Below, piece after piece: positions 7,174-51,603 of a stretch of 64,000 bases of DNA. Position 1 is the stretch's first letter; each line of letters opens with the position of its first letter. The DNA lies in IMG/VR virus record IMGVR_UViG_3300042308_001511, positions 124,001 to 188,000 of that record. The stretch is one strand, 5' to 3'. Below the pieces are notes generated by a model. That model saw only the letters and a list, made by a program, of their open reading frames with translations, ran no database searches and had not been told where the DNA came from. A program made the translations under genes and the position numbers.

Positions 7174-7599
7174 ATGATTAAGAAATTTGAAAATTTTGAT
7201 TTTTTACCAACGAAAAGACTTTTCCTGGACGATTGGAGAATTCCTAGAGATTGTGCAACTTATATGTGGCAGAGAAAGGTTGATTGTAGAATATTCCACG
7301 AAGAGTGGGATGTCGTAAGATCATATGGTCAGTTCGTTGCTTGGATTGAAAGTAATGGTATACCTGACGTGGTTAGTTTCGATTATGATCTCGATGATGT
7401 AGAGGAATTGAAAGAGGATCTTCCGATTGAAGAGTGGTTCAACATAGAAGAAAACTATTCGTATAAAGGTACTGACTGTCTGAGATATCTAATACGTAAA
7501 TGTCGAGAAGTAGGTAGTGTATTACCAAAATGTATAATACATTCTGCCAATCCAGACGGTTGTGATGAACTTAAACAACTAATTGACGCAAACATATAA
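7174..7599 (+). CDS. Cyclic-phosphate-processing receiver-like (cREC) domain protein with N-terminal tag
   Basis: LFLDDWRIP, WDVVRSY, VSFDYDL, IHSANPDG; starts MIKKFENF. Confidence 0.7.
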   Translation: MIKKFENFDFLPTKRLFLDDWRIPRDCATYMWQRKVDCRIFHEEWDVVRSYGQFVAWIESNGIPDVVSFDYDLDDVEELKEDLPIEEWFNIEENYSYKGTDCLRYLIRKCREVGSVLPKCIIHSANPDGCDELKQLIDANI

Positions 7600-7813
7600 G
7601 AAAGATATGAGAAAGTTTTTGGTATTTGAGACAGAAAATGATCGTAAGAAAGTCGAGGTCACAAATTCATTTATATTTGAGTCGGAGTCGGAGATAAACC
7701 GGTTCAATAGCACCGGAGAGATATCAGATAGTGAGACAGGTCTTGCACTACTTGACAAGTTCCCGGTCTACATCGCAATGGTTAGACACATTCACATAAC
7801 CTTCGAGAAATGA
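7583..7813 (+). CDS. Hypothetical protein
   Basis: 76-aa ORF within the operon; true start may be the internal ATG (MRKFLV). Confidence 0.5.
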   Translation: MTQTYKKDMRKFLVFETENDRKKVEVTNSFIFESESEINRFNSTGEISDSETGLALLDKFPVYIAMVRHIHITFEK

Positions 7814-7977
7814 AAGACTACACACCTAGAGACCTTGAATACTTCACAGAGAAGCTCTGGTCCTCTGTAGGAATACCAGAAAGATACCTCGATGGAACGA
7901 AAAACGCAGATATGTTAGAGAGAATCTTAAAAAAGAGGAAAAGGATTAGTCGTATAAAGAGTTTGTGGAAAATATAA
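7810..7977 (+). CDS. 55-aa mini-protein: portal (gp20)-like fragment plus C-terminal tag
   Basis: Below the ORF-track cutoff; MKDYTPRDLEYFTEKLWSSVGIPERYLDGTKNADMLERILKKRKRISRIKSLWKI; ATGA overlap with the upstream gene. Confidence 0.55.
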   Translation: MKDYTPRDLEYFTEKLWSSVGIPERYLDGTKNADMLERILKKRKRISRIKSLWKI

Positions 7978-8010
7978 GCAAACTTTTGATAAGTATTTCA
8001 TATATCTTTT

Positions 8011-8184
8011 ATGAGTAAATTGAAGTTGGCAACATTGTGGATTTTCATTATTGGATTTTCAACGTCTTTATTTTGTCTGATGTTATCTGATAAAAATGAT
8101 ATTGCAGGGTGGTTTTTGGCTAGTTTCTATTCATTTATATGTGTCTATTATGCCACAAAAGAACTAACAAATAATAAAAAATGA
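8011..8184 (+). CDS. Small two-TM membrane protein
   Basis: 57 aa, MSKLKLATLWIFIIGFSTSLFCLML..; ATGA overlap with 8181. Confidence 0.5.
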   Translation: MSKLKLATLWIFIIGFSTSLFCLMLSDKNDIAGWFLASFYSFICVYYATKELTNNKK

Positions 8185-8492
8185 TTAAACACGAGATAAA
8201 AGTAGAGATGAAGGATTCAGTATCCTTACGCAATCTTATAGAATCTGCATATAATATGAACGGAGAAGAAGGAACTATAATTGGTAATGAACACAGATTA
8301 TTGGTAAATCCAGTTTTGGATGATGAACTTTTTCGTGTGCTTACTGGATTACATAATAGTACAGTAAAGGTTTTCAACACAGAAGTTATTGATGGAACTA
8401 TTAGATTTATGGTTTCTGAAAAATCAGGCGAAATAAATCTTTCACCAATATCTGTACGTTGTATATGTGAAGATAGATGGATATTTTATTAA
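8181..8492 (+). CDS. Hypothetical protein
   Basis: 103-aa ORF. Confidence 0.6.
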   Translation: MIKHEIKVEMKDSVSLRNLIESAYNMNGEEGTIIGNEHRLLVNPVLDDELFRVLTGLHNSTVKVFNTEVIDGTIRFMVSEKSGEINLSPISVRCICEDRWIFY

Positions 8493-8515
8493 TAAATATA
8501 TCTAAAATGTAAGTG

Positions 8516-10413: not shown

Positions 10414-10520
10414 AATTTTTATATATAAAAAAAGCCATTCCATCCGTGGCAGTGAAAAAAATAAAATAAGTAAAAACAAACCGCGTAAATTTTTATAAAT
10501 AACATAAATCTAAATAAGAA

Positions 10521-11480: not shown

Positions 11481-11485
11481 TAATT

Positions 11486-14003: not shown

Positions 14004-15902
14004 CTACTTCTCATTTACGTCTTCGAAGTCTACATCTTCTACCGTGCCATCACTGGTTGGTTGATCATTTGTATTTGTGTTTTCGTTTGTACTCTCTTGA
14101 TACAATCTTGTACTGATTGGTCCCCAAGTTTCGTTCAACGCTTCAATAGAACTATCAATTGCCGCAACATCTGCATCTGCGTGAGCTTTCTTAAGAATAT
14201 CTAACTTTTCGTTGATTGCATTTGTATCTTCTGTAGTTAGTTTTTCAGAAAACTCTTTGATTTGTTTTTCTGTTTGGAAAATCATACTATCTGCAGCATT
14301 TAGTTTTTCAACCTTCTCTTTTTCGAGTCTGTCTGCTTCCGCGTTAGCTTCTGCGTCTGCTTTCATTTTCTCAATCTCTTCTTTAGAAAGTTGCGATCCA
14401 CCCTCAATTCTGATAGAGTTTTGTTTACTAGTTGCTTTGTCTTTAGCAGAAACTGAAAGTATGCCATTTGCATCTATGTCAAAGGTTACTTCTATCTGCG
14501 GGATTCCTCTAGGTGATGGCATAATTCCATCGAGGTTGAATCTTCCGAGTGATCTGTTGTCTTTGGCCATTGCTCTCTCACCTTGTAAAACGTGTAACTC
14601 TACTGATGGTTGATTATCTGCCGCAGTTGAGAAAGTCTCACTTTTCTTTGTAGGGATTGTAGTATTTGCTTCAATCAACTTTGTGAAAACTCCACCCATT
14701 GTTTCGATTCCTAATGATAGTGGTGTTACGTCTAATAATAACACATCTGTAATACCACCTGTCAATACAGCACCTTGAATTGCAGCACCCAATGCCACAA
14801 CTTCGTCTGGATTTACTGAACGGTTAGGTTTTTTACCTACATATTGTTCGATTGCATCCTGAATTGCAGGAATTCTAGTAGAACCACCCACCAAAATTAC
14901 TTCATCGATATCTGATGGTTTCAAGCCTGCGTTTTTAAGTGCAGATTTTGCACATCCGATTGCTCTGTCCACAAGTTTTGCGGTCATTTGTTCGAACTTT
15001 GCTTTAGTTAATTTCTTCACAAAGTGTAAAGGAAGTCCGTCTTTTGCAGTGATATATGGAAGGTTGATTTCAGACTCAGAAGTAGATGAAAGTTCAATTT
15101 TTGCTTTCTCCGCAGCATCCTTCAACCTTTGAAGTGCCATAGGATCTTTTGATAAATCCATTGAGTTCTCTGATTTGAACTCAGTTATCATCCAATCAAT
15201 AATTGCGTTATCAAAGTCATCACCTCCTAAGTGAGTATCACCATCAGTAGATTTTACTTCAAAAACACCATCACCAATTTCCAATACCGAAACATCGTGT
15301 GTACCACCACCGCAGTCAAATACTAATATTTTAGATTCATTGTCTTTTTTGTCTAAACCATATGCAAGTGCTGCTGCTGTAGGTTCGTTGATAATTCTTT
15401 CTACTTTCAAACCAGCAATCTCACCTGCTTCAATAGTAGCAGTTCTTTCTGCATCACCAAAGTATGCAGGAACTGTAATAACTGCTCGGGTAACTTCGTA
15501 TCCTAAATAGTCTTCTGCGGTTTTTTTCATTTTTTGTAGAATCATCGCAGAAATCTCTTGTGGTGTGTATTCACGTCCATCAATGTTAACAACCGGAACA
15601 TTACTAGCAGATTTCTTTACTTCATAAGGAACTCTTCCAACTTCGTCGGTACAAACAGAGTGGTCTTTTCCGATGAATCTCTTAATTGAGTAGATTGTGT
15701 TTTTTGGGTTTGTTACTGCCTGTCTTTTTGCAGGGTCTCCAATTTTTCTATCGTTGTTAGAGAAAGATACGATTGATGGTGTCGTTCTTCTACCCTCTGC
15801 GTTGGAGATTACTACTGGCTCCCCGCCTTCTACCACTGCGACGCACGAGTTTGTTGTCCCGAGGTCAATTCCGATGATTACATCTTTTTTACTCATAGTC
15901 AT
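14004..15902 (-). CDS. dnaK: Chaperone DnaK (Hsp70)
   Basis: [32 protein letters not shown], acidic VEDVDFED tail. Confidence 0.98.
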
Positions 15903-18321: not shown

Positions 18322-18867
18322 CTATTTAGTCTCTATATCGAGTTCTTCGGTTTCTTCACCATCGACCTCTATTTTTAATTTTACTAACATATCCTCATCA
18401 ACCTCATCAATCTTTACAGTTTTTTTAGGTAGTTCTTTGATAAGTTGGTCTGCAGAGTTGTATCTTTTTATCTTGACTTTACAATTCTCTATGTCTTCGC
18501 TACCGAAGTCTTTTGTAAGGTCTTTCTGAACTGCATCCTTTAAGTCTATTGTGAATATTATAGAGTACCAGTTTTCTCCGTCATCGAGTCTGCATGAAAG
18601 TGTAGATGCAATCTTAGAAATTTCTGCATCAACCAGACTTGTTCCATAATCTGCAAAGGATATCTTCTTATCTGCTGCTGCTTTCTTTTCACCTTTACTT
18701 TTTGCCTGACTGAAACTTATAATTTCGTACTCTTCTGGTTCTTCACTATCTTCTGGAAAAATCTTCATTATTTTTTCCTTTATAGTCTTAAGTGCTTGTT
18801 CGGCATGGAACTCAGGAGTCTCATCCATTCCCTCTTTTAAATACTCTGTAAATTTTATTATCTTCAT
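18322..18867 (-). CDS. Acidic hypothetical protein with N-terminal tag
   Basis: Starts MKIIKFTEYLKE. Confidence 0.65.
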   Translation of the reverse strand: MKIIKFTEYLKEGMDETPEFHAEQALKTIKEKIMKIFPEDSEEPEEYEIISFSQAKSKGEKKAAADKKISFADYGTSLVDAEISKIASTLSCRLDDGENWYSIIFTIDLKDAVQKDLTKDFGSEDIENCKVKIKRYNSADQLIKELPKKTVKIDEVDEDMLVKLKIEVDGEETEELDIETK

Positions 18868-19208: not shown

Positions 19209-19961
19209 TTATTTTTTGTAATATGGTTCTAAATAAATCTTTATCGCCTTGTTTATACTGGCATCCGAGGCTTCGAGATCTTCCACGTCAAGATCTTGTA
19301 AATCATTCTTTATTCTTTGTCTGACATCGCCCAAACTCATGTAAGTTAAGTTTACATTAGACTCATCTGAGAATAGTTTCAAAAACATTACGTTGTGTGA
19401 CTCTGATCCAAATGGTATATTAATGTTTTGGTCGACTATCGGATAAAGTGTTTTTAGTATGTTCAGAACTCTCTGTGTCTGCGTTGCTTCGGGTCCATTT
19501 GGGAGCTCCTGGAACGATGAAACTCTTTTCGGTAGTGAGAATGCCATCCTGATGGATATGAGTGCTTCTACGTCGTCTAATAACCTTTCCAGTTTTGTCT
19601 CTACATCTTCGTCTGATTTGAAGCTCACTGTCTTCTGATCAACCAGGTGCATATTTGCATTGTTCGCGAATGAATATTGTTTGGCGTATAGTATTACCGT
19701 GACGTAAGGTTTGAGACCGTCACCTTCGCAAAGTCTGATGATATTACACAATCTCTCTGTTACCTGTTCTACTTTTCCTTCGAGTAAACTGATGTGCTCG
19801 GACTTGTTCTCAAACGGTGTATCTGACATAATCTCAACATCAAGTCTTTCACCTTCAACATAAACGTTGGATGTGTACCCGTCAGGTAGATCATACATAA
19901 CCTCCTTTGTTGTATTCAGTATGTAGTCCATCCCACCAAAGCTCTCGAATCTCTTTATCAT
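19209..19961 (-). CDS. Hypothetical protein with N-terminal tag
   Basis: Starts MIKRFESF. Confidence 0.65.
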   Translation of the reverse strand: MIKRFESFGGMDYILNTTKEVMYDLPDGYTSNVYVEGERLDVEIMSDTPFENKSEHISLLEGKVEQVTERLCNIIRLCEGDGLKPYVTVILYAKQYSFANNANMHLVDQKTVSFKSDEDVETKLERLLDDVEALISIRMAFSLPKRVSSFQELPNGPEATQTQRVLNILKTLYPIVDQNINIPFGSESHNVMFLKLFSDESNVNLTYMSLGDVRQRIKNDLQDLDVEDLEASDASINKAIKIYLEPYYKK

Positions 19962-20058: not shown

Positions 20059-20760
20059 TTAGTTAGTAGAAAATTTCATAGTATTTGTAAAATAATCTTT
20101 ATTCTTACTTACCCAACCAGTTTCATTTAATTCATCTACCCATTGTTGTAGAGTAATCATTTTCATTGGATTTTTAAAAGAAACCAAATCTTCTTGTGGA
20201 ACTTCTGAAATATCTTCATCTATAATTATTTCTGAATCATCAATCGGATTCCATTTTTGTTGTGGAATAGAATACTGACTATTCTTCATAGTTAGTACAG
20301 GAACATCTTTTGTTAAATCAAATTCATAATCTGATTTCTTAACACTAGAACCAGGTTTCAAACCGATTGTGAAATTATTCACAATATCATCTTTTGCCAT
20401 AATAGATAGCCAAGAAATTGTATCCGGAACTTGTAGAGTTTTAGCTTTCTCGTCTGTTAACTCAACCAATACTTCAGAATTTTGCAAAAGCACAATTTTC
20501 GCTAACCCTGGAGTATATTGTAAGTAATCTATTGGGTTACTCATTTCTTCTTTACCTGGATTAGCACCACCAAGATAATGTATGTTATACAAATTACCCT
20601 TTGGTTGTATTGCATTTTTAGTTAAAAATTCTTGCATAACTTTACCTTTTTCGGATTTACCTTTAACTAAAGTTTCTATTTTTTTAAAAATATTTTCATT
20701 TATGCCAAGTATCCATTTCTTGTCATCTATGAATTTTTCGTACAATTTTATGTTCTTCAT
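20059..20760 (-). CDS. Hypothetical protein with N-terminal tag
   Basis: Starts MKNIKLYEKF. Confidence 0.65.
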   Translation of the reverse strand: MKNIKLYEKFIDDKKWILGINENIFKKIETLVKGKSEKGKVMQEFLTKNAIQPKGNLYNIHYLGGANPGKEEMSNPIDYLQYTPGLAKIVLLQNSEVLVELTDEKAKTLQVPDTISWLSIMAKDDIVNNFTIGLKPGSSVKKSDYEFDLTKDVPVLTMKNSQYSIPQQKWNPIDDSEIIIDEDISEVPQEDLVSFKNPMKMITLQQWVDELNETGWVSKNKDYFTNTMKFSTN

Positions 20761-29287: not shown

Positions 29288-29702
29288 CTATCAAATCGTT
29301 TATGAGTTTGTGTCTATTCCATTTCCTGTCAACCATCGACAAGAAGTCTAGTCCGAATATTTCTATCATCTCATCATCGGAAAGTTCATCACTGAAAGTT
29401 GTTCCAATTGGAACTCTCTGACCATCAGACTGCACCAATACGAACTCACCGGTCTTATTACAATATTCGTGACCGACTAATCCGTACCTGGTGGGGTCTT
29501 GTATCCTAAGTTTGATGTCTGATATCCTCTTTGGTAGATATTCTTGTTCATCATTACAGACACACCATTGACAATAGTAACAGAGTATCCTGAGAAGTGT
29601 ACTATCCCGCTGGTGCCATCCGAATACCGGTGCCACTACACTTATCCATTGAACGTAGTAGTGGTCAAGCCGGCTATTATCGAAAATTTCGGTAGATGAC
29701 AT
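29202..29702 (-). CDS. Hypothetical protein with near-C-terminal tag
   Basis: RHKLINDLI followed by a tail overlapping the next gene. Confidence 0.55.
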   Translation of the reverse strand: MSSTEIFDNSRLDHYYVQWISVVAPVFGWHQRDSTLLRILCYYCQWCVCNDEQEYLPKRISDIKLRIQDPTRYGLVGHEYCNKTGEFVLVQSDGQRVPIGTTFSDELSDDEMIEIFGLDFLSMVDRKWNRHKLINDLIDGEDNGCGERDVQNKEGLDIRPGGKQNN

Positions 29703-31309
29703 TAGAGTATCTCTCTTTCGTAAATAGTATCAGTTTTAGGTGCAGCAGAAAGTATATCTTCTGAAGTTCCGTCCTGGAATTGTCTGAAGTTCTCTACAAA
29801 TTCATTCGCCAATGATGTACAAGCACGATCATATTCACTCACATCTGACCATGTATTTCTAGGATTTAGTATTTCTGAAGGAACACCCTCACAATTAGTA
29901 GGAATACTAAGATTGAATACTGGAAGTTTATCAAAAACAACATTATCCAATTTACCCTCAATCGCGGCAGTTATCATTGCTCTTGTATAAGAAAGTTTCA
30001 TCCTGTTACCGATACCATAAGGTCCACCAGTCCATCCAGTGTTTACTAACCAAACTTTTATATCAGATCCATTCAACTTTTCACCTAACATCTCAGCATA
30101 TTTAGCTGGATGTAGTGGAAGGAATGCCTTACCAAAACAAGCCGAGAATGTTGTTGTTGGTTCTGTTACACCCATCTCAGTACCTGCAACCTTTGCAGTG
30201 TATCCTGACATAAAGTGGTACATAGCTTGTTCTTTTGTCAATCTGGAAATTGGAGGAAGTACACCAAATGCATCAGCAGTAAGAAAGAAAACATTTTTAG
30301 GTGAAACACCGGTAGATGGTACTACAATGTTATCGATGTGATGTATCGGATAAGATACACGTGTGTTCTCAGTTATACCTCTTCCAGAATAATCTGGTTG
30401 ATTAGAACCATTATGGAACTCTACATTTTCAAGTAATGCACCTGGTCTTATAGCGTCATATATCTGTTGTTCTTTCTCTCTGGAGATGTCAATAACTTTG
30501 GCGTAACATCCACCCTCGAAATTGAATATACCATCGTTAGACCAGCCGTGTTCATCATCACCAATCAACCTTCTTTTTGGGTCCGATGAAAGTGTTGTCT
30601 TTCCGGTTCCTGAAAGTCCGAAGAAAATAGCAGTATCGCCTTCGTCACCTACATTAGCTGAACAGTGCATAGAAAGAACGTTTTTCTCGTGTGGTAGTAT
30701 ATAATTTAGTACAGAGAATATTCCTTTTTTAATCTCACCGGTATATCCTGTTCCACCGATAAGTATTCTTTTATGTGTGAAACTAATTGCTGCGAAGTTC
30801 TTTTGTCTGGTTCCATCGGTTGTAGGATCCGATTCGAAACCTGGTAAACAAAGTATATTCCATTCTGGTGAGAAACTACTAAGTTGTTCGGTCGTTGGTC
30901 TGATAAACATATTATGACTGAATATGTCTGACCACGGAAGTTCACATATTGTTCTTAGTGACATTCTATTGTTCTCATCTGCACAAGCAAATGCGTCTCT
31001 TACCCAAAGTTCTCTTTCGTTTGCATATGTCGTAGCTTTACTCCATAAACCTTCGAAATTTTCGGTAGTCATAGGTATGTTTATATCACCCCACCAAACG
31101 GTTGTATCGGTGTTCTGATCTTTTACTATGAATCTATCCTTCGGTGATCTTCCTGTAAAAGCACCGGTATTGATAGCGAGTGTACCATTTTCAGCGAGTG
31201 TACCCATCGATGCCTCTATGGTATGTTTGACAGAATCTGACGGGTTGGTGTTCCAGTTTGTTTTATCGGAATTTATTCCGATTGATTGTAGTTGATTTCT
31301 TTGGATCAT
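29702..31309 (-). CDS. pckA: Phosphoenolpyruvate carboxykinase (ATP)
   Basis: TGRSPKDR, YTGEIKK, MHCSAN, GLSGTGKTT, IGDDEHGW, NFEGGCYAK, ENTR. Confidence 0.97.
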   Translation of the reverse strand: MIQRNQLQSIGINSDKTNWNTNPSDSVKHTIEASMGTLAENGTLAINTGAFTGRSPKDRFIVKDQNTDTTVWWGDINIPMTTENFEGLWSKATTYANERELWVRDAFACADENNRMSLRTICELPWSDIFSHNMFIRPTTEQLSSFSPEWNILCLPGFESDPTTDGTRQKNFAAISFTHKRILIGGTGYTGEIKKGIFSVLNYILPHEKNVLSMHCSANVGDEGDTAIFFGLSGTGKTTLSSDPKRRLIGDDEHGWSNDGIFNFEGGCYAKVIDISREKEQQIYDAIRPGALLENVEFHNGSNQPDYSGRGITENTRVSYPIHHIDNIVVPSTGVSPKNVFFLTADAFGVLPPISRLTKEQAMYHFMSGYTAKVAGTEMGVTEPTTTFSACFGKAFLPLHPAKYAEMLGEKLNGSDIKVWLVNTGWTGGPYGIGNRMKLSYTRAMITAAIEGKLDNVVFDKLPVFNLSIPTNCEGVPSEILNPRNTWSDVSEYDRACTSLANEFVENFRQFQDGTSEDILSAAPKTDTIYEREIL

Positions 31310-33698: not shown

Positions 33699-34433
33699 AT
33701 GAGATACTTAAAGCACTTCGAAAGACTGAATTATAGCTCCTACAGTAACGTGGCCAGGGAGCTAAGGAGACAATCGCCCAAAGAGAACAAGGAGAGGGCA
33801 GACGACCTTCTCGACCACGCGGAACGTATGGAGCTAAACAAGGTTAGGCAAGAGCTCTCAGGAGTTATTTCGCCAATATGGATAAGGATAACTGATACGG
33901 AAGGAAACGGTAATTCAGGCTCCAAAAAAAGTGGAGTCGGCCGGTTCTACGCTGTGCCATATCCGGAGTACGAACTATTCTGGGAAAACATCGAGGACGG
34001 TAGTGTCACTGAAATACCCTTCAATTTGGTCATAACACCTGTTGACGAGGAAGCCGAGAAAGTCTGCAGGGAAGTTATGCCAGAGGGACCGGATCTTTCC
34101 TTGTCAGGCATAGCTGCGATGTGGCTTACGATTGAGCTAAAGCTCGAGCCTGGCACATACGAGTTGGGCAGGATGAAGCTGGTCAATATGGACCCGTACG
34201 TCTACGGAAGATGTGAATTAGGTTCGGAGCCGAAGCTAAGAAGACCAGCCTACGGCACTGTCATGAACACACTACAAAAGATGTTCACGGACAAGTCCGG
34301 CGAGTTCTACCAGGAGTTCGAGGAAAGGGTAATCGCGGGAATGGGACTATCATCTGGTCACGGCCTATCTATGAATAAAATCGCGAAACACCTTAAATCC
34401 CTCAGTGTGAACAAAGGATTTATGGCAGACTAA
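33699..34433 (+). CDS. N-tagged hypothetical protein (family with 58176 and 59508)
   Basis: MRYLKHFERL..Y..A..L..RA..L; C-terminal GLSSGHGL resembles GLSSDYGL of 59508. Confidence 0.65.
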   Translation: MRYLKHFERLNYSSYSNVARELRRQSPKENKERADDLLDHAERMELNKVRQELSGVISPIWIRITDTEGNGNSGSKKSGVGRFYAVPYPEYELFWENIEDGSVTEIPFNLVITPVDEEAEKVCREVMPEGPDLSLSGIAAMWLTIELKLEPGTYELGRMKLVNMDPYVYGRCELGSEPKLRRPAYGTVMNTLQKMFTDKSGEFYQEFEERVIAGMGLSSGHGLSMNKIAKHLKSLSVNKGFMAD

Positions 34434-34434: not shown

Positions 34435-35025
34435 ATGAGATACATTAAACTATACGAAGAGTTCAAACACGACGAGATTTATGACGTGATGATGTCTATA
34501 TGTGATACGATTCCCTTTAAAGAATCAACACAATACCCTTCCACCGAGATGGTTAGGGTCTATGAGACTGATTTACCTGTACATTTCGATCCTAAGCAAT
34601 ATGAGGAATACCTTGATGGGTGTACCATCACATCGTATGCATTGACAACGGAAGAATATAACATAGTCTTCATAAAGGGTGATTTGAAAGAGGCCGCACT
34701 TTCCTGGTTGAACGAAGTATACGGGAAACTAATACCAGTAGTCCGTCCTGATGGTGGCGTTTGGGATCATGAAAAAATATGTTATATTGATGGTGATAGA
34801 AGACCATTATTTATGTTAGTTCAACAAAAAGTATGGATCGAAGAAGATAGAATTTGGCGATTCCTTAGCATGCACTTTGGTATAAAATATAAGGAAATGC
34901 AGGATCTTGTGAGAATTTGGTTATCACAGACTTATAAGTTGAGTGGATACACACCTGTACGTACGAGTTTAGATGGATCTATTGGCGTTTTGGAATTATT
35001 TAACCCTAACACAGACACTAACTAA
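34435..35025 (+). CDS. N-tagged hypothetical protein, paralogue of 42882..43424
   Basis: MRYIKLYEEF.HDEIYDVMMSICDT nearly identical in both. Confidence 0.7.
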   Translation: MRYIKLYEEFKHDEIYDVMMSICDTIPFKESTQYPSTEMVRVYETDLPVHFDPKQYEEYLDGCTITSYALTTEEYNIVFIKGDLKEAALSWLNEVYGKLIPVVRPDGGVWDHEKICYIDGDRRPLFMLVQQKVWIEEDRIWRFLSMHFGIKYKEMQDLVRIWLSQTYKLSGYTPVRTSLDGSIGVLELFNPNTDTN

Positions 35026-38713: not shown

Positions 38714-39133
38714 TTAATTTCTAATTAGTATTTGCCGACAGATTTCGTACTCCTCTTTTGTAAAACCTAACCAACTACGACATTTGACTACATTATCCAG
38801 ACCAACGGATTCAATATCTCTTGTGTTATCGTCTATTATTATGTAATTGTCACACGGGTTCTCTCTAAGATACTCTTGTATTTCTAAACCTCTGCCGTCA
38901 TTCAATACTGGTGTTACACCATGTATCTCGGTGGTTATACCATGATATTCGAATATTCTTTGTATTTCTTTCTGAGAGTGTTTGACTCTCCATGTAGAAG
39001 TTATTATTGGTTTTAGATTGAATTCCTGACAAAGGTTATCATACAATTCACATGATAACGAGTTCCAGTCATTTCTGGTCACCGTATTTAGGACACCATC
39101 GATGTCAGTGAATATGTATATAGTTTTGTTCAT
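38714..39133 (-). CDS. HAD phosphatase of the RNA-repair ('Swiss army knife') type
   Basis: FTDIDGVLN, ITSTWR, RGLEIQEYL, YIIIDD, GFT. Confidence 0.8.
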   Translation of the reverse strand: MNKTIYIFTDIDGVLNTVTRNDWNSLSCELYDNLCQEFNLKPIITSTWRVKHSQKEIQRIFEYHGITTEIHGVTPVLNDGRGLEIQEYLRENPCDNYIIIDDNTRDIESVGLDNVVKCRSWLGFTKEEYEICRQILIRN

Positions 39134-39349: not shown

Positions 39350-40015
39350 TTATATAATATTAGGTTCATCAAACCTATTAACTCTTGATTTTATGGGAGT
39401 AGCATCAAAAAGAACTAACTCACCATCACTATTATATCCTAAATTAAAATTATGAAAGTCTAATTTAGGTAGGTCTTTTAAATTAAAGTAACAATTCCAA
39501 ATTTGAGTTACTAGTTTTTTAGAAAATGGTTTATCTAAATTATATTCTTCTTCTATACTATTAATATAATCTTCTTTTTCCAAACTACCCCAGTTGTAAA
39601 AAATTATATCAGTTGCTAAAACGGCCAATGATTCATATACTCGACCATATTTCATTTTATTAAAAAAATCATTTAATCCTTCTACTCTATCCATTATAAT
39701 CACCCAAAGCATTAAACCTTTAGCTTGATATCTAAAAACATTATAATATTTAACAACTGATATATTAACATTTTTTATTAAATCCAATGCCATTTTTGCC
39801 TCTCTTTTATCGGTTGTTACTTTTAAGACTTTATTATCAAAGGAGTAAGCATTTCCATATGAACCACTTGATAAAAATTTAACTTTATTTATATCAATAT
39901 TTAACTTTTGACAAATATCACCTAATTCAATTTTGGATAATGAAATTGATTTTGAACCATATGGGTGTTTGGGTTTCAAATATCTAAATTCTTTTAACTC
40001 CTTTAAGTATTTCAT
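39350..40015 (-). CDS. Protein-kinase-like protein with N-terminal tag
   Basis: LSSGSYGNAY, VLKVT..E, DFHNFNLG, LFDA; starts MKYLKELKEF. Confidence 0.65.
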   Translation of the reverse strand: MKYLKELKEFRYLKPKHPYGSKSISLSKIELGDICQKLNIDINKVKFLSSGSYGNAYSFDNKVLKVTTDKREAKMALDLIKNVNISVVKYYNVFRYQAKGLMLWVIIMDRVEGLNDFFNKMKYGRVYESLAVLATDIIFYNWGSLEKEDYINSIEEEYNLDKPFSKKLVTQIWNCYFNLKDLPKLDFHNFNLGYNSDGELVLFDATPIKSRVNRFDEPNII

Positions 40016-40865
40016 ATTCTTCTTTTAGAGGTATTCTTGGATCTACATCGAACCTATCACTGATATAATCTTTTAGTTCGTTCTCAATGTAATGATCCGG
40101 AACTTCCATATCATCAGGTTCGGAATCCATTTTCACAATTATGTGTTTATTGAAATCTTCCAGAACTTCTGGTTTTATAGCATCTACGAAACCATCAGAA
40201 ACAACAAAAGCACGTGAGAACCTATCTTTTACATCGAAATCACCTTCTGGAACTTTCATATAATAGGTTACAAAAGTTTTTAGGAAATCAACATATTTAG
40301 AATCTGATTCAACGTGTTTTAGAACCGGTTTTATTATTTTATTGAACGTTCTGGAAGTACCTAATACCAATCCAATTACTGCCAACATAGGATAAAAAGG
40401 TGCCAACAAAAGTGGTATGGCTCTTGGAACTGCTTGCCAGACTGCCTTCTTTGCATCCATTGCGATTTTTGCTTCTTTTGCATCTGCGAATATTGCTCTT
40501 AACATACCGAATGTAAACTTACCACCGCTATTTACAAGATAGTCTTTTAACTTACCTCTTTTTGATAATGAAACCTGCGTAGCAATTTCGTCATCCAATA
40601 ATAGTTCGGAGACCTTTTCAGCCTTTTTGGCTTTTAGTGCCGACCAAAAACGCGTGCTCGATAGAAGATAATCAGAATACCCAAGTTCTTTCAACATAAA
40701 TTTGGCTCGGTCTTCGGTCAAATCAATCAAATTGTTAGCCACACCTAAAAGTCTTTCTTTGTTGGCTGTTTCCGATGCTACCTTTCTGAGTTCAGATTTT
40801 AGATTGTCATCCCTAAGTAGTAGACTCTCGACCACAAAATTTTCATATACTTTAAGCTTTCTCAT
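39984..40865 (-). CDS. N-tagged hypothetical protein with a hydrophobic segment
   Basis: Likely start MRKLKVYENF at 40865, after TTATATATA. Confidence 0.65.
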   Translation of the reverse strand: MRKLKVYENFVVESLLLRDDNLKSELRKVASETANKERLLGVANNLIDLTEDRAKFMLKELGYSDYLLSSTRFWSALKAKKAEKVSELLLDDEIATQVSLSKRGKLKDYLVNSGGKFTFGMLRAIFADAKEAKIAMDAKKAVWQAVPRAIPLLLAPFYPMLAVIGLVLGTSRTFNKIIKPVLKHVESDSKYVDFLKTFVTYYMKVPEGDFDVKDRFSRAFVVSDGFVDAIKPEVLEDFNKHIIVKMDSEPDDMEVPDHYIENELKDYISDRFDVDPRIPLKEEYEILKGVKRI

Positions 40866-42621: not shown

Positions 42622-42882
42622 ATGAAACACTTAAATTCGTACAAAACCTTCGAGAATATGGAAAGAGATAGTATGCAAAGAGACATTTGCGACAGATGTG
42701 AGCAACCTCCTATAAATAATACTACAATAATGAGTAAGTTCAACACGCAAGTAATCTGTATGCCGTGCAAAAAAAAAGAGATGAAACACACTAAATACGA
42801 AGACGCGTGTAAAGCAGAAAAGCAAGCAAATGATAAAGGTGATTATAACTTCAAAGGGATAGGAAAGCCAGATGATTTATAA
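42622..42882 (+). CDS. Small CxxC..CxxC zinc-binding protein with N-terminal tag
   Basis: CDRC..ICMPC; starts MKHLNSYKTFE. Confidence 0.6.
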   Translation: MKHLNSYKTFENMERDSMQRDICDRCEQPPINNTTIMSKFNTQVICMPCKKKEMKHTKYEDACKAEKQANDKGDYNFKGIGKPDDL

Positions 42883-43424
42883 TGAGATACATTAAGCTTT
42901 ACGAAGAGTTCGGACACGACGAGATTTACGACGTGATGATGTCCATATGCGATACTGTCTCTTTTAAAGAGTCGGATGTTTACCCTTCCACCGAAAGTAT
43001 CAGGGTCTACGAGACATCTGAACCCGTAGAGTTCGATCCTAATCAATATGAGGAATACCTGGAGGGTTGGACTATCAGACGCTTCATAATTGCTAATTGG
43101 GTTGTAATAGGCGGTAAAAATATTATTGCTTTCATAAAGGGAGACTATAAAGAGGCTAGTATATCCTGGTTGAAAGAAGTATATGGGAATCTAAAACCAA
43201 AGGAGCAAGATGGTAATATCTATTATAGAGATGGTGAAAGCGAACCTTTATTTTACTATTACAAATACAACACCGGGTACTACTACGTCAACCATAAAAG
43301 AATTTGGTCACTTTTTGAATATTTCGGTCTAAAAAAAGATGAAATAAGGAAATTGATAAGTGTTTGGCTTAGAGATATCTATAATTTAAGTGAACTCGCA
43401 CCTGATCCAAAATATTATATGTAG
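42882..43424 (+). CDS. N-tagged hypothetical protein, paralogue of 34435..35025
   Basis: Starts MRYIKLYEEF. Confidence 0.7.
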   Translation: MRYIKLYEEFGHDEIYDVMMSICDTVSFKESDVYPSTESIRVYETSEPVEFDPNQYEEYLEGWTIRRFIIANWVVIGGKNIIAFIKGDYKEASISWLKEVYGNLKPKEQDGNIYYRDGESEPLFYYYKYNTGYYYVNHKRIWSLFEYFGLKKDEIRKLISVWLRDIYNLSELAPDPKYYM

Positions 43425-47972: not shown

Positions 47973-47973
47973 T

Positions 47974-48950: not shown

Positions 48951-48961
48951 TTTTACTATAT

Positions 48962-49465
48962 TTGCTTATGAGGAAGTGGAACGATTTTGAGTTGACCGAC
49001 TATCTCCGTGAAGAGAGGATGAACTGCTATTATTTCTGGTCCAAAGGAAAGATAACTAGGAAAAAATCTCACGAAGGAATATACGAACAGAACCTAGCTG
49101 GAACCTGTGAGTGGAACGGCATCAGACTCAAAAACGGGTTCAACATAATATTCAACAGATTCTTAATAAAATATACTATGGAAGGAAAATGGAACGGCCA
49201 AAGTAAAGCTGAATATTTGAAAAATTATAAAAGAATAGAAGATATCATCTCTAAATCAGATGGTGATGTTGATAAACAAGAGAAACTTGCAAAATTACAA
49301 GCCAATAAAATAAAAGATGAATGGAAAGCCATAAACCGAGCAATTGCAGCAAAAGATATGGATTATGAAAATATCTTTGAAATTTTCTTCCAAAGAGCCT
49401 ACGAATTAGGATCCGTATCAAAACAGGAATATAGAGAATACCAAATGGATAAACTGGGTATATGA
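48962..49465 (+). CDS. Hypothetical protein with C-terminal tag (start uncertain)
   Basis: Ends REYQMDKLGI. Confidence 0.55.
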   Translation: MLMRKWNDFELTDYLREERMNCYYFWSKGKITRKKSHEGIYEQNLAGTCEWNGIRLKNGFNIIFNRFLIKYTMEGKWNGQSKAEYLKNYKRIEDIISKSDGDVDKQEKLAKLQANKIKDEWKAINRAIAAKDMDYENIFEIFFQRAYELGSVSKQEYREYQMDKLGI

Positions 49466-49613
49466 TAGTTCTGTACAATATAATTGTGGTCTTCGTTCTG
49501 GCGTTGATTGTGAAACTTGGTGTCACTTACACTGATTATGAAGAGTATTTTGTTGCACTTGGTGTCATAGACATAGTCTACCTCAGTTGTGTTATTATGT
49601 ATATTTTTATTAA

Positions 49614-50084
49614 CTAAATAGTACGTTGGCTACGAAATCTGTCCTCTTGTCTTCGGAGAAGTTTATCTAAGTCGGTCTCAATTATAGATCTCCTTATATT
49701 TTCAGCATCATTCATACGACGATCCATCTCGGTGTCAAAAGACTCACATACATTACAAGCACTTTTGTATGATATATGTAATTCGTATAAATTATTACCA
49801 CTATCAGTCACGTCCATTATAGTAAGAACAGAATCATCGTTTGTACCATTCGCAGACTGAAAAACCATAAGTAAGTCACCTTTCTCTATTTGTCTAACAC
49901 CATAGCTATTTACACCTAAACGACATTCTTTGTCTTTTAGAAGCATTTTCCAAAGTCTTATAGCTTTCTCTTGGTATGGAGATATTTTGTATTGTTTCTC
50001 GGGATACATTGTTGCACCGAATCTACGTGTTAAACGTCTCCAACTAACTTTCAGTCTTTTTATTCTCCAACTTATAACAATCAT
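49614..50084 (-). CDS. Hypothetical protein
   Basis: 156-aa ORF. Confidence 0.55.
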   Translation of the reverse strand: MIVISWRIKRLKVSWRRLTRRFGATMYPEKQYKISPYQEKAIRLWKMLLKDKECRLGVNSYGVRQIEKGDLLMVFQSANGTNDDSVLTIMDVTDSGNNLYELHISYKSACNVCESFDTEMDRRMNDAENIRRSIIETDLDKLLRRQEDRFRSQRTI

Positions 50085-50131
50085 AATAAAGTTTACTTTT
50101 ATGTTCTATAAAACGTTGGACATTTGTTTAG

Positions 50132-51148
50132 TCAATTAATAACTACATAGGATTTTTTTCCAAACGTTGAGTCGGTGTAAATCAATTCGCCATTTTCATA
50201 CACATCCATTGATATTGCATTATTAGGTACTATGTTATATTGCCAATATCCTTTTCCATATAGTGTGTGTGATATTTCTAAATAATTTCCTGAGTCGTCT
50301 TTGATAGTCATACTTCTTTCTCGTGTTCCATCTTTGTAGTTATATGATAGAATTGTGAATTCTCCGGTGTCTGTACCATTCCTGTTTGTCCTGTAGAAAC
50401 CTGTTGTGCAGCCATTGTGTGTTGATGGTAGGTTACTTTGTGAAGTTTCGGTATTCCATACGGTGTCTGTAAAATATTTTTGCATATTATTACCGTCTTC
50501 TCTTATGACGTTAGTAGCTTTATTGTCTATTGCGTGTCTCAGGAAGTCTTCAACATTTTTGTATCTATCTGAGTTCATCTGATTTTTAAGGTAATCGACG
50601 TAGTCTTGTTGAGTTTCTATCTCTGGTATGTCAGAGATGAAAGAATCTATTGAGAAATACATATAATGGAAAGAAACATCGGTCTCATTGAAGAATAATA
50701 GACCTTTTTTACCTAATTCTTCTACCCTTTCTGGTATACTCATCATCATATTCATAGATTCTGCGCCCATCATATCATCTACTTCGATACGATGGAAATG
50801 TGTGTATCCGTATGCTTTTGCAATTCTTACTGCTTTTCCTAAATTTCTCAATACGGATAGACCATGTCTTTGTACTCCTGGTGTGAATTCGTATATTTCA
50901 ATCTGTTGGAACAGTTTGTATAGAACTATGTCATCTGATGGCATATCGGAAAACAACCTATTCTCTTTATCGTAGAGGTAAAGATCCAACGACTCTATTG
51001 TCTGTTTTGGTACTGGTGTGTTAGATATAAGCATCACCTTACCACCACGAATTTTTATTTCATTTATACGTTGATCTAATTTTTCCTGTAGTGCATCGGA
51101 TTGTACGAAGCAGTCAATTATGAAAATTGGTTTTATTTCTAACATCAA
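50132..51148 (-). CDS. Glycosyltransferase-like protein, paralogue of 11518..12501
   Basis: ISNTPVP..YDKEN, HGLSVL, FHRIEVDD. Confidence 0.4.
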   Translation of the reverse strand: MMLEIKPIFIIDCFVQSDALQEKLDQRINEIKIRGGKVMLISNTPVPKQTIESLDLYLYDKENRLFSDMPSDDIVLYKLFQQIEIYEFTPGVQRHGLSVLRNLGKAVRIAKAYGYTHFHRIEVDDMMGAESMNMMMSIPERVEELGKKGLLFFNETDVSFHYMYFSIDSFISDIPEIETQQDYVDYLKNQMNSDRYKNVEDFLRHAIDNKATNVIREDGNNMQKYFTDTVWNTETSQSNLPSTHNGCTTGFYRTNRNGTDTGEFTILSYNYKDGTRERSMTIKDDSGNYLEISHTLYGKGYWQYNIVPNNAISMDVYENGELIYTDSTFGKKSYVVIN

Positions 51149-51207
51149 ATTGATTCTTTTTATTTATATTTGTATCTGTACTTATATTATTAAAAAGATC
51201 AATCTAC

Positions 51208-51603
51208 ATGAAGAAACTTTTTCTGGATGACATTAGGTCACCAAAAGATGCAATCGGTTTAGTACCTTCACATATGAACCAGTTCTACTGGGCCAATGAC
51301 TGGGACGTAGTTCGTAGTCACGACGAGTTTGTTGATTGGATCGTAACGAATGGTGTTCCTGACTTTGTTAGTTTTGACCACGACTTAGCAGATGAGCACT
51401 ACATCGACTTTATGGGTTTGTCTGATGGTAAAGAGAAAACTGAAACAACTGAGAAAACTGGATACGAGTCTGCAAAATGGCTTGTTTACCACTGTCTCGA
51501 TAAAGGTGTCGGTTTACCCGAATACCAAGTTCACTCGGCAAATCCAGTTGGTAAAGCAAACATACAGGGTTATTTAGAGAATGCGAAAAAACATCTACTC
51601 TGA
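51208..51603 (+). CDS. Cyclic-phosphate-processing receiver-like (cREC) domain protein, untagged copy
   Basis: LFLDDIRSP, WDVVRS, VSFDHDL, TGYESAKWL, VHSANPVG. Confidence 0.78.
   Translation: MKKLFLDDIRSPKDAIGLVPSHMNQFYWANDWDVVRSHDEFVDWIVTNGVPDFVSFDHDLADEHYIDFMGLSDGKEKTETTEKTGYESAKWLVYHCLDKGVGLPEYQVHSANPVGKANIQGYLENAKKHLL

What the first reader, a model, noticed from the sequence alone, without database searches (positions are those of the whole stretch)
7174..51603. Natural experiment: two cREC paralogues, one tagged with a late-type promoter and one untagged with a host-type promoter
7174..7599 and 51208..51603 share LFLDD.R.P, WDVVRS, VSFD.DL and HSANP.G. The first has an added MIKKFENF leader and TAATATATA at 7161. 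The second starts directly at the domain and follows TATATTTG (51165). This suggests the tag and promoter are acquired together as a module that re-routes an existing enzyme into the virion.
Basis: partly seen in the sequence, partly recalled or inferred. Interest (0 to 1): 0.6.

Follow-up and report, generated by a model that had tools for sequence, protein, structure and literature searches.

The report
Address-tagged cREC enzyme in huge phage
A huge freshwater phage carries two copies of a predicted cyclic-phosphate-cleaving enzyme, and one copy has recently gained a phage-specific promoter plus a 10-residue N-terminal tag that about one in ten of the phage's proteins share; the tag resembles the phage T4 signal that loads proteins into the capsid, but its function is untested.

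Summary
Both ORFs are cREC_REC proteins and keep every invariant family residue.

The leader belongs to a proteome-wide tag, M-[KR]-x-[IL]-K-x-[YF]-E-x-F. About 45 of 490 ORFs carry it, on 42 unrelated protein bodies. It is conserved at the amino-acid level.

The tag is linked to a -10-only promoter, T-AATATATA-N4-A (odds ratio 11.7, p = 2e-13). The link holds in two related huge phage genomes.

The better natural experiment is among orthologues. The closest cREC-1 orthologues (68% identity) lack both features. The window copy has an 8-codon insertion right after the same ATG, a rebuilt promoter and a lost internal start.

Related phages have a T4-type portal, prohead protease and capsid gene. 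Each sits behind this promoter, so "late-type" is reasonable.

Routing into the virion is inferred only from the likeness to the T4 capsid targeting sequence MKTYQEFIAE. No cleavage motif follows the tag, there are no proteomic or RNA data, and this record lacks head genes.

Verdict: a real, apparently undescribed tag and promoter system whose function is open.

The parts
7174..7599 (+). cREC-1, 141 aa: N-terminal tag plus a cREC (REC-fold) domain
   Evidence: Pfam PF20274, E 2.9e-16, residues 15-138. AF2 model pLDDT 83.7. VIA-align best matches are receiver domains, Z 9.6-7.8, over model residues 10/12-138. It keeps all 15 invariant columns of a 28-sequence alignment.
7174..7212 (+). Tag and linker, MIKKFENFDFLPT. 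The core MIKKFENF(D) is an 8-codon insertion directly after the ATG.
   Evidence: DNA alignment with orthologues. It is absent from 5 distinct orthologous loci and from 32 cREC-2-like loci. Residues 1-10 have pLDDT 53 and no secondary structure. The orthologues' internal ATG (MKRLF) is ACG here, so the domain cannot be made without the tag.
7161..7169 (+). Phage-type promoter motif TAATATATA. The predicted transcript start is 7174, the A of the ATG, which would make the mRNA leaderless.
   Evidence: AATATATA is the most enriched upstream 8-mer (64 genes, 13.9-fold). The logo is T-AATATATA with no -35 element and an A at the 5th base after the motif.
7150..7157 (+). Second, upstream AATATATA copy. 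The same palindromic stretch reads TAATATATA on the minus strand at 7160-7152.
51208..51603 (+). cREC-2, 131 aa: the canonical untagged form, starting MKKLFLDD
   Evidence: Pfam PF20274, E 6.5e-21. All 32 related loci start the same way.
51165..51172 (+). Host-type (Bacteroidetes -7) promoter motif TATATTTG
   Evidence: 35 genes in the record have TAnnTTTG within 48 nt upstream of the start, and none is tagged.
18322..18867 (-). Tagged gene (MKIIKFTEYL); TAATATATA 4 nt before the ATG
   Evidence: The orthologue in LR745206 keeps a tag at 34% body identity.
19209..19961 (-). Tagged gene (MIKRFESFGG); TAATATATA 4 nt before the ATG
20059..20760 (-). Tagged gene (MKNIKLYEKF); motif 17 nt before the ATG
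33699..34433 (+). Tagged gene (MRYLKHFERL); motif 21 nt before the ATG
34435..35025 (+). Tagged gene (MRYIKLYEEF); member of a four-copy tagged paralogue family
39984..40865 (-). Tagged gene (MRKLKVYENF)
42622..42882 (+). Tagged gene (MKHLNSYKTF); motif 20 nt before the ATG
42882..43424 (+). Tagged gene (MRYIKLYEEF); same four-copy family
57883..58143 (-). Tagged gene (MKNKKIMKYETF); motif 4 nt before the ATG
60497..61672 (+). Tagged CCA-adding tRNA nucleotidyltransferase (MKKKIMSYDVF); GATATATA 4 nt before the ATG
   Evidence: PF01743, E 9e-30. The orthologue in relative G001 (48% identity) starts MRILNFKNFLVE behind TAATATATA-N4-ATG.
61686..62162 (+). Tagged gene (MSIKKYDGF); motif 5 nt before the ATG
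38714..39133 (-). Untagged HAD_SAK_2 RNA-repair phosphatase behind a host-type TAnnTTTG motif. It is the counterpart of the tagged kinase/HAD_SAK_1 protein elsewhere in the genome.

Best explanation
The window lies in a huge freshwater phage of the lineage that includes the 634-735 kb 'Mahaphage'-type genomes. This lineage has a T4-type head module and probably infects Bacteroidota.

The phage appears to run two promoter classes. The first is the host sigma-A type, TAnnTTTG. The second is phage-specific and has only a -10-like element, T-AATATATA, with the transcript start predicted at a conserved A five bases downstream. When the spacer is 4 nt, that A is the A of the ATG and the mRNA would be leaderless.

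About one ORF in ten carries an N-terminal tag of about 10 residues, M-[KR]-x-[IL]-K-x-[YF]-E-x-F. The tagged set includes a CCA-adding enzyme, a polynucleotide kinase/HAD phosphatase, a GNAT and cREC-1. The tag is attached to unrelated protein bodies and is expressed mainly from the phage-specific promoter.

cREC-2 is the ordinary version of the enzyme: untagged and behind a host-type promoter, so probably made early by host RNA polymerase. cREC-1 is a second, divergent paralogue. In this lineage it gained an 8-codon tag insertion just after its ATG, a consensus promoter 4 nt upstream, and the loss of its internal start codon.

My preferred mechanism is inferred, not shown. The tag would be a capsid (prohead-core) targeting signal like the T4 CTS. 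Proteins made late would then be loaded into the head and delivered with the DNA. cREC-1 would be present from the first moment of the next infection to open cyclic phosphates (2',3'-cyclic RNA ends, cyclic ADP-ribose or cyclic-nucleotide signals), and cREC-2 would be synthesised afterwards.

Confidence by step:
- Tag family and its coupling to the promoter: about 0.9.
- The promoter is non-early and depends on a phage factor: about 0.65.
- Virion targeting: about 0.35-0.4.
For: Tag family:
- 56 of 490 N-termini match a simple pattern, against 2.6% of windows at internal Met residues.
- 45 curated members fall into 42 BLAST-unrelated bodies.
- Synonymous codons vary as in the genome average, and Y and F interchange, so the signal is at the protein level.
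- The tag pattern is kept in 14 reciprocal-best-hit pairs at 21-61% identity.

Coupling to the promoter:
- Tag against AATATATA: odds ratio 11.7, p 2.4e-13.
- Replicated in G001 (odds ratio 3.2, p 8.5e-5), in G002 (odds ratio 3.7, p 1e-6) and in scattered relatives (odds ratio 5.4, p 0.002).
- None of the 35 genes behind a host-type motif is tagged.

Gain in cREC-1. The tree gives (window, L023) 98/83 with L027 outside, and both L023 and L027 are untagged.

Promoter class:
- The motif precedes the tail fibre, a tail-spike-like gene, a neck-like gene and a baseplate operon here.
- In G001 and G002 a P-type motif precedes the Gp23-type capsid gene, the S77 protease ORF and the T4-type portal: the exact AATATATA at 4 of these 6 starts, and one-base variants (GATATATA, TTATATATA) at the G001 protease and the G002 capsid gene.
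- There is a phage sigma factor and no multisubunit RNA polymerase.

CTS analogy:
- T4 IPII and IPIII start MKTYQEFIAE.
- T4 targeting depends on residues 4 and 7 (review PMC9026906). The tag's conserved hydrophobic positions are 4, 7 and 10.
- All five relatives tested have a T4-type portal and Gp23; S77 protease matches were found in four of the five, only one above Pfam's cut-off, and none in G001 by that search. In LR745206 the three lie in T4 order.
- Tagged genes cluster beside the head module.
- In the model the tag is disordered and outside the REC fold.
Against: - There is no direct evidence of timing or of virion content. No RNA runs hold the sequence.
- No [LI]xE or [AGS]xE cleavage motif is enriched after the tag, whereas the T4 CTS is cleaved.
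- Tagged proteins are acidic (median pI 4.9 against 5.8), unlike the basic T4 internal proteins.
- Several tagged proteins are cytoplasmic RNA-repair enzymes, which are made early in T4.
- The same promoter also precedes the ribonucleotide reductase large subunit, so the class is not purely 'late structural'.
- AT-rich motifs with a fixed start-site distance are EARLY promoters in phiKZ/AR9-type phages (PMC5312081).
- This record has no recognisable portal, capsid, protease, terminase or sheath gene. The T4-like head is therefore known only from relatives.
- The cultured distant relative PTm1 lacks the tag system, so no proteome can be borrowed.
Confidence: 0.4

Rival explanations
1. The tag is a real protein-level address, but for something other than the capsid. 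Candidates are hand-off to the phage's own chaperone or unfoldase set (Hsp70, a DnaJ-like protein, a ClpB/ClpC-like Hsp100), a timed degron, or recruitment to a replication or assembly site in the cell.
For: - The phage encodes Hsp70 (window 14004-15902), a ClpB/C-like 706-aa protein and a tagged protein with a DnaJ zinc-finger domain.
- The tag is a basic and hydrophobic amphipathic peptide.
- Tagged enzymes (CCA-adding enzyme, kinase/phosphatase, GNAT) act in the cytoplasm.
- No cleavage motif follows the tag, and the cargo is acidic.
Against: - Nothing links the tag specifically to the chaperones.
- Tagged genes sit beside the head and baseplate modules.
- The architecture matches the T4 CTS positions 4 and 7.
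- The lineage has the T4-type head-core machinery.
Confidence: 0.3
2. The tag serves translation. On leaderless or very short-leader mRNAs, the first ten or so codons, or the nascent peptide, would promote initiation or early elongation. The shared N-terminus would then be an expression device rather than an address.
For: - Many tagged genes have the promoter 4-5 nt from the ATG, which predicts leaderless mRNAs.
- The tag codons are A/T-rich.
Against: - Synonymous codon usage within the tag equals the genome average, and conservation follows residue class (I/L, Y/F, E, F at 3-residue spacing).
- The tag is equally frequent with 17-26-nt leaders (11 of 25) and with 4-7-nt spacing (15 of 27). 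Twelve predicted-leaderless genes lack it.
- Some tagged genes are internal to operons.
Confidence: 0.12
3. The AATATATA motif is an early promoter read by a virion-carried phage RNA polymerase, as in phiKZ/AR9. cREC-1 would then be the early copy and the reader's timing would be inverted.
For: The AR9 early consensus, AAATATATATTAT-N6-G, looks similar and also has a fixed start-site distance. The ribonucleotide reductase gene carries the motif.
Against: - No RNA polymerase beta or beta' domains were found in G000, G001 or G002.
- The motif precedes capsid, portal, protease, tail-fibre and baseplate genes.
- Early-type genes (NAD ligase, nucleotidase, UvdE) carry the host-type motif instead.
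Confidence: 0.08
4. The shared N-terminus is a compositional by-product of an AT-rich genome (many K, I, F, Y, N and E codons) plus start-codon calling, and is not a functional element.
For: The genome is about 36% GC. My gene calls and tag patterns are home-made.
Against: - The enrichment over internal Met windows is 4.4-fold.
- The register relative to Met1 is fixed, and the link to one promoter motif is strong in three genomes.
- Orthologues retain the tag at 21-61% identity.
- Cellulophaga phage phi4:1 and Tenacibaculum phage PTm1 (the latter 31% GC over the stretch read) have almost no such N-termini.
Confidence: 0.03

Closest known systems
Phage T4 capsid targeting sequence (CTS) of internal proteins IPI/IPII/IPIII (MKTYQEFIAE)
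   Same: - A peptide of about 10 residues at the extreme N-terminus, starting MK.
- Hydrophobic or aromatic residues at positions 4 and 7, with an acidic residue between aromatics.
- Shared by otherwise unrelated proteins.
- Found in a phage lineage with a T4-type portal, prohead protease and capsid gene.
- Diversifying cargo.
   Different: - About 45-70 carriers per genome, rather than a handful.
- The register differs: the core [YF]-E-x-F sits at positions 7-10, against Y-Q-E-F at 4-7 in T4.
- No I-x-E cleavage site follows the tag.
- The cargo is acidic and includes RNA-repair enzymes.
- Packaging is untested.
T4-type late promoter (TATAAATA, -10 only, read by gp55/gp33)
   Same: An AT-rich element of 8-9 bp with no -35 partner, a start site a fixed few bases downstream, and a position in front of head and tail genes.
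   Different: The sequence is TAATATATA. The phage factor found is an ECF-like sigma with regions 2 and 4, not a gp55-type protein. In about 40% of cases the motif sits 4-5 nt from the ATG, predicting leaderless mRNAs. It also precedes ribonucleotide reductase.
cRec (cyclic-phosphate processing Receiver) domain, Pfam PF20274; Iyer et al. 2021, Viruses 13:63 (PMC7824862)
   Same: Both proteins score well above the Pfam cut-off. They keep the acidic DD and D-x-D residues and the HSxNPxG motif, have a REC fold, stand alone, and occur in a jumbo phage that also has RNA ligases, a polynucleotide kinase and HAD phosphatases.
   Different: The family's activity is itself only predicted. Neither gene is directly next to an RNA ligase or an NAD-processing gene here. 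An N-terminal extension on cREC-1 was not seen in any of the 37 related loci or in the phage-database matches.
Bacteroidetes sigma-A promoter (-7 TAnnTTTG, -33 TTTG)
   Same: TATATTTG upstream of cREC-2. The motif is 6.5-fold enriched upstream of genes and precedes early-type functions.
   Different: No clear -33 TTTG at the usual spacing before cREC-2 (read). The 35-nt distance to the ATG is at the long end of this genome's range.
phiKZ/AR9 virion-RNA-polymerase early promoters and P1 DarB N-terminal packaging signal
   Same: An AT-rich extended motif with a fixed start site (AR9). An N-terminal signal sufficient for capsid loading of an anti-defence protein (P1 DarB).
   Different: No phage multisubunit RNA polymerase was detected. 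The DarB signal is about 30 residues long and is not shared across dozens of proteins.

Membership tests
cREC_REC (PF20274) | Profile score above Pfam's gathering cut-off (27 bits) | tested here: met
   60.4 and 75.2 bits
cREC_REC (PF20274) | Conserved acidic residues at the positions of the receiver-domain catalytic aspartates | tested here: met
   D19, D20, D70 and D72, and also H123, N126, P127 and G129, are invariant in 28 sequences, both paralogues included
cREC_REC (PF20274) | Receiver (CheY-like) alpha/beta fold | tested here: met
   AF2 pLDDT 83.7. VIA-align's top 50 are almost all receiver domains: Z 9.6-7.8, rmsd 2.5-3.2 A over about 90 residues. Foldseek matches are weaker (E 4e-3).
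cREC_REC (PF20274) | Context with NAD/ADP-ribose or RNA-repair genes rather than histidine kinases | tested here: inconclusive
   The genome holds two RNA ligases, a kinase/HAD protein, HAD_SAK_2 and a CCA-adding enzyme, but none is adjacent to either cREC gene.
cREC_REC (PF20274) | Hydrolysis of cyclic phosphate linkages | not testable with these tools
   The activity is a prediction in the founding paper.
T4-type capsid targeting sequence | Short N-terminal peptide shared by otherwise unrelated proteins | tested here: met
   45 carriers, 42 unrelated bodies
T4-type capsid targeting sequence | Targeting determinants: hydrophobic or aromatic residues at positions 4 and 7 | tested here: met
   I/L three residues before the aromatic in 44 of 53 pattern-selected N-termini (position 4 where the tag is in its usual register), and Y/F at position 7, which was itself a selection criterion, and F at position 10. 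T4 sequence; the role of residues 4 and 7 is from PMC9026906.
T4-type capsid targeting sequence | Cleavage site for the prohead protease ([L/I]-x-E) at the end of the tag | tested here: not met
   No enrichment of [LI]xE or [AGS]xE at residues 10-35. cREC-1 has none in its first 30 residues.
T4-type capsid targeting sequence | Phage has the T4-type prohead core machinery (portal gp20, protease gp21, capsid gp23) | tested here: inconclusive
   Portal and Gp23 are present in all five relatives tested; S77 protease matches in four of five, one above Pfam's cut-off. None was found in this 344-kb record, which is probably incomplete.
T4-type capsid targeting sequence | Tagged proteins are in the virion; the tag is sufficient for packaging | not testable with these tools
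   No cultured carrier of the tag was found. PTm1 lacks it.
T4-type late promoter | -10-only AT-rich element in front of structural genes | tested here: met
T4-type late promoter | Consensus TATAAATA and a gp55-type factor | tested here: not met
   The consensus is T-AATATATA. The only sigma found is ECF-like, with regions 2 and 4. No search with a gp55 family model was made.
T4-type late promoter | Late timing | not testable with these tools
   No RNA runs hold the sequence.
Bacteroidetes sigma-A promoter | -7 element TAnnTTTG enriched upstream of genes | tested here: met
Bacteroidetes sigma-A promoter | -33 TTTG at the canonical spacing upstream of cREC-2 | tested here: inconclusive
   Only ATTG at 51149-51152, 12 nt upstream of the -7 element (read).

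The most novel reading that the evidence does not exclude
Huge phages with T4-type heads that infect Bacteroidota use one degenerate 10-residue N-terminal address to load dozens of different enzymes into the capsid for co-injection. The cargo would include a near-complete tRNA/RNA-repair kit and a cyclic-phosphate hydrolase. Any gene could be recruited into this cargo by a change of about 40 nt that creates a leaderless late promoter plus the tag, as caught in the act at cREC-1.
Probability: 0.3. Interest if true: 0.85.

Novelty: new variant of a known kind. Interest (0 to 1): 0.64.

Why it matters
If the tag is a packaging address, it would show several things:
- The largest phages carry a large, evolvable set of pre-made enzymes into the cell.
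- There would be a simple sequence rule for predicting that cargo from metagenomes alone.
- RNA repair and cyclic-nucleotide or cyclic-phosphate hydrolysis would count among first-minute counter-defences.
- It would offer a short portable tag for loading proteins into phage heads.

Some findings stand even if the address has another meaning. About 10% of the proteome carries the tag, it is coupled to one promoter class, and many mRNAs are predicted to be leaderless. None of this turned up in the literature I could search.

Tried and rejected
- **Complex prediction.** I tested a G001 tagged 129-aa protein against the G001 protease/scaffold-like 690-aa ORF. The result was 'no answer' (score 0.00, folded without alignments). 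It is not evidence either way.
- **Donor search.** A search for a donor of the 60-nt promoter-plus-tag block found nothing longer than 20 nt.
- **Orthologue searches by word patterns.** The search for related loci found no orthologues of the tagged CCA-adding enzyme or of the kinase/HAD protein. The handle-based genome search did find them.
- **Head genes in this record.** Pfam S77, Gp23, Portal_T4, Terminase_6N and Phage_sheath_1 all failed. PHROG and Pfam scans of the largest ORFs and BLAST with relatives' proteins failed too.
- **Cultured phages as proteome proxies.** Cellulophaga phi4:1 and Tenacibaculum PTm1 do not have the tag system.
- **Tag gain and loss across genomes.** The reciprocal-best-hit comparison is limited by my pattern-based classifier. 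Most of the 28 'discordant' pairs are tags in a shifted register. Where the promoter differs, the tagged member has it in 8 of 10 pairs, which is not significant.
- **Residue identity within the tag.** Tag residues are not more identical than the protein body in orthologue pairs. The pattern is conserved, not the letters.
- **Reads and RNA.** No RNA runs hold the sequence. Contigs from four other freshwater runs show the tag and promoter region unchanged in near-identical strains.
- **Searches and limits.** The two large protein searches were not used, because the family scans settled the identity.

Full report
**What the window is.** The window is bases 124001-188000 of a 344,083-bp IMG/VR virus record. 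It has about 36% GC and genes on both strands. It encodes Hsp70, PEPCK, a T4-type topoisomerase II large subunit and DUF2201. The nearest database phages are the uncultured 634-642 kb genomes LR745206.1 and LR756502.1, at 73% amino-acid identity in topoisomerase II. Near-identical DNA occurs in lake and river metagenomes from 13 studies. Capsid-protein relatives are almost all phages of Bacteroidota, from Lak (Prevotella), Tenacibaculum, Chryseobacterium and Flavobacterium. The host-type promoter motif is the Bacteroidetes -7 element. The host phylum is an inference from these two points.

**The observation.** Both ORFs exist. Both are cREC_REC proteins above Pfam's cut-off. They are 36% identical, E 2e-24, and the alignment starts at residue 14 of the first and residue 2 of the second. 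In a 28-sequence alignment both keep all 15 invariant columns: L16, L18, D19, D20, R22, W45, V48, F69, D70, D72, G99, H123, N126, P127 and G129. An AlphaFold2 model of cREC-1 has mean pLDDT 83.7. Its best structural matches are receiver domains, with Z 9.6-7.8 and rmsd 2.5-3.2 A over model residues 10/12-138. Residues 1-10 have pLDDT 53 and no secondary structure, so the leader lies outside the fold. cRec is a predicted, not assayed, cyclic-phosphate phosphoesterase described in jumbo phages (PMC7824862).

**The leader is one member of a proteome-wide tag.**
- I called 490 ORFs in the whole record.
- Many begin like MIKKFENF, for example MKILKTYEGF, MRYIKLYEDF, MKWIKLFEEF and MIKRFESFGG.
- A simple pattern matches 56 of 490 N-termini, against 2.6% of 16-residue windows that start at internal Met residues.
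- Aligned on the aromatic residue, the consensus is M-[KR]-[KY]-[IL]-K-x-[YF]-[ED]-x-F.
- Codon choice inside the tag follows the genome average: AAG 18 against AAA 14, TTC against TTT, GAA against GAG, and six or more codons for I/L. Y and F interchange. The constraint is therefore on the peptide, not the RNA.
- After removing doubtful cases, 45 carriers remain. With the tag cut off, they fall into 42 BLAST-unrelated families.
- Recognisable bodies include a CCA-adding tRNA nucleotidyltransferase (window 60497-61672), a kinase (AAA_33) plus HAD_SAK_1 protein (record 260756-261988), cREC-1, a GNAT, a DnaJ zinc-finger protein and a STAND-like NTPase. Most have no known family.
- Tagged proteins are more acidic than the rest: median pI 4.9 against 5.8, p 2e-5.

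**The promoter classes.**
- AATATATA is the most enriched 8-mer in the 80 nt upstream of genes: 64 genes, 13.9-fold. TATATTTG is enriched 6.5-fold.
- Of 89 AATATATA sites, 61 lie within 40 nt upstream of a same-strand start.
- The logo is T-AATATATA with no -35 element. There is a conserved A at the fifth base after the motif.
- The distance to the ATG is bimodal, either 4-5 nt or 17-25 nt. The A is present in 23 of 25 long-spacing cases. In the short-spacing class that A is the A of the ATG, which predicts leaderless mRNAs.
- G001 (465 kb) and G002 (436 kb) show the same bimodality and the same A.
- In this record the motif precedes a 2709-aa tail fibre, a tail-spike-like protein, a neck-like protein, a tape-measure-like protein and a baseplate operon. 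It also precedes the ribonucleotide reductase large subunit.
- Host-type TAnnTTTG precedes 35 genes. These include NAD-dependent ligase, an NT5C nucleotidase, UvdE, HAD_SAK_2 and cREC-2.
- The record encodes an ECF-like sigma factor. No RNA polymerase beta or beta' domains were found in it or in G001 and G002.

**Tag and promoter go together.**
- In this record: tag and motif 27, tag only 29, motif only 32, neither 402. The odds ratio is 11.7 and p is 2.4e-13.
- The link is reproduced in G001 (odds ratio 3.2, p 8.5e-5), in G002 (odds ratio 3.7, p 1e-6) and in about 420 ORFs from scattered related contigs (odds ratio 5.4, p 0.002).
- No tagged gene has a host-type motif within 48 nt (0 of 45 against 35 of 445, p 0.06).
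- The tag is equally common with short and long spacing (15 of 27 against 11 of 25).
- Tags and the motif also occur in LR745206 and in the 735-kb LR756501.

**The real natural experiment is among orthologues.**
- Eight related viral contigs hold cREC-1 orthologues, at 57-81% identity. Five distinct ones start MFAIMKRLFLDD or MKRLFLDD, without the tag.
- The DNA alignment shows the same ATG in all of them. The window has 24 extra bases (IKKFENFD) directly after it.
- The 13 bases before the ATG read TAATATATAACCT in the window, where the orthologues have AAAAAATTATCCT/G.
- The orthologues' second ATG is ACG in the window, so the tag cannot be skipped.
- In the tree the cREC-1 clade is solid (100/99). 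The window pairs with L023 (98/83) and L027 lies outside. Both are untagged, so a single gain on the window's branch is the simplest history.
- All 32 cREC-2-like loci start directly at the domain. So do the matches in cultured phages.
- G001 and G002 have only the cREC-2 type.
- Four other freshwater runs hold near-identical strains with the tag region unchanged.
- No donor sequence for the block was found.
- Elsewhere the tag is stable. The CCA-adding enzyme of G001 (48% identity) keeps a tag and TAATATATA-N4-ATG. Fourteen reciprocal-best-hit pairs keep the pattern at 21-61% identity.
- A standalone HAD protein in G002 and G004 is untagged and sits behind TATATTTG. This mirrors the cREC pair.

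**What the tag may do.**
- The closest known device is the T4 capsid targeting sequence. IPII and IPIII start MKTYQEFIAE.
- In T4 the ten residues suffice for loading into the prohead core. Residues 4 and 7 carry the targeting, and residues 8 and 10 carry the cleavage (PMC9026906; PMC3012670).
- The tag here has Lys at position 2 and hydrophobic or aromatic residues at positions 4, 7 and 10.
- The lineage has the T4-type head machinery. All five relatives tested carry Portal_T4 and Gp23. Peptidase_S77 matches were found in four of the five, only one of them above Pfam's cut-off, and none in G001 by that search. In LR745206 the three lie in T4 order.
- In G001 and G002 a P-type motif stands in front of the capsid gene, the 690-699-aa protease ORF and the portal: the exact AATATATA at four of these six starts and one-base variants at the other two. 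Tagged genes flank them.
- This makes 'late-type promoter' reasonable and 'capsid address' plausible.

**Evidence against the capsid-address reading.**
- No cleavage motif follows the tag.
- The cargo is acidic.
- Several carriers are cytoplasmic repair enzymes.
- The record itself has none of the head genes. It is therefore probably a fragment, despite CheckV's 91% completeness estimate.
- There are no transcript or proteome data.
- One complex prediction gave no answer.

I therefore put virion targeting at about 0.35-0.4. Another protein-level address (chaperone, degron or localisation) gets about 0.3, a translational role about 0.12, an inverted early/late reading about 0.08, and artefact about 0.03.

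**Novelty.** cREC is known, the T4 CTS is known, and Bacteroidetes promoters are known. Three things appear to be new. First, one tag sits on about a tenth of the proteome of a huge-phage lineage. Second, the tag is tightly linked to a -10-only promoter that is often placed for leaderless translation. Third, there is a documented recent gain of the tag and promoter together on an enzyme. My searches of the held literature found no description of any of these.

Noticed in passing
window 7052-7160, minus strand: Candidate small RNA divergent from cREC-1. TAATATATA lies on the minus strand at 7160-7152, with the predicted start near 7147. The 98-nt RNA folds into three hairpins (-31.7 kcal/mol, z -3.0, 0 of 200 shuffles as good). 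The last hairpin is followed by GUUUUU, like an intrinsic terminator. The stems are conserved with compensatory changes in L027 and L030. There is no Rfam match. In L023 the same minus-strand promoter drives a 187-aa ORF instead.
   Followed up: partly
whole record G000, and G001/G002: Both promoter classes sit either 4-5 nt or about 16-25 nt from the ATG. With AATATATA, an A is conserved at the 5th base after the motif. This predicts that a large share of the mRNAs are leaderless.
   Followed up: partly
whole record G000: No portal, major capsid, prohead protease, terminase or sheath gene could be found, although all five relatives examined have T4-type head genes (portal and capsid in every one). 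The 344-kb record is probably a fragment, despite a 91% completeness estimate.
   Followed up: partly
window 38714-39133 (-), window 60497-61672 (+); record 260756-261988 (-), 67.8 kb and 111.3 kb: Two parallel RNA-repair sets. The tagged, phage-promoter set is the kinase/HAD_SAK_1 protein, the CCA-adding enzyme and cREC-1. The untagged, host-promoter set is HAD_SAK_2 and cREC-2. There are also two RNA ligases that carry neither the tag nor either promoter motif.
   Followed up: partly
window 14004-15902 (-), 29702-31309 (-); record 93802-95922 (+), 14784-15395 (+): The phage encodes full-length Hsp70 (E 2.6e-249), ATP-dependent PEP carboxykinase (E 5.7e-216), a ClpB/ClpC-like Hsp100 and an ECF-like sigma factor with regions 2 and 4.
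   Followed up: no
L028 and L029, about 2998-3361: In two related contigs the cREC-1 orthologue is open for only 46 codons in the start frame, and the rest of the domain lies in another ORF. This looks like a frameshift or pseudogene.
   Followed up: no
window 7810-7977 (+): A 55-aa ORF two genes downstream of cREC-1 gives a weak, sub-threshold match to the T4 portal family (profile positions 285-310, E 0.002). It is the only such match in the record.
   Followed up: partly
window 51667-53259 (+): The gene just downstream of cREC-2 is a DUF2201 metallopeptidase/VWA protein with a long G/Q/D/P low-complexity insert. It has both a host-type and a phage-type motif upstream, at 30 and 19 nt from the ATG.
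   Followed up: no
window 34435-35025, 42882-43424; record 292704-293138, 299307-299939: A four-member tagged paralogue family starting MRYIKLYE[ED]F, with a shared D[VQ]VMMSICD motif. It is the only multi-copy family among the tagged proteins.
   Followed up: no
G001 247865-249937 (-), G002 269288-271387 (-): In relatives the gene in the prohead-protease position (Peptidase_S77 match in G002, LR745206 and LR756501; G001 assigned by its position and like N-terminus) is the N-terminal part of a 690-699-aa ORF that directly precedes the capsid gene. This may be a protease-scaffold fusion. Its N-terminus, MKxxLIVEN, contains an I-V-E motif like the T4 gp21 cleavage motif.
   Followed up: no
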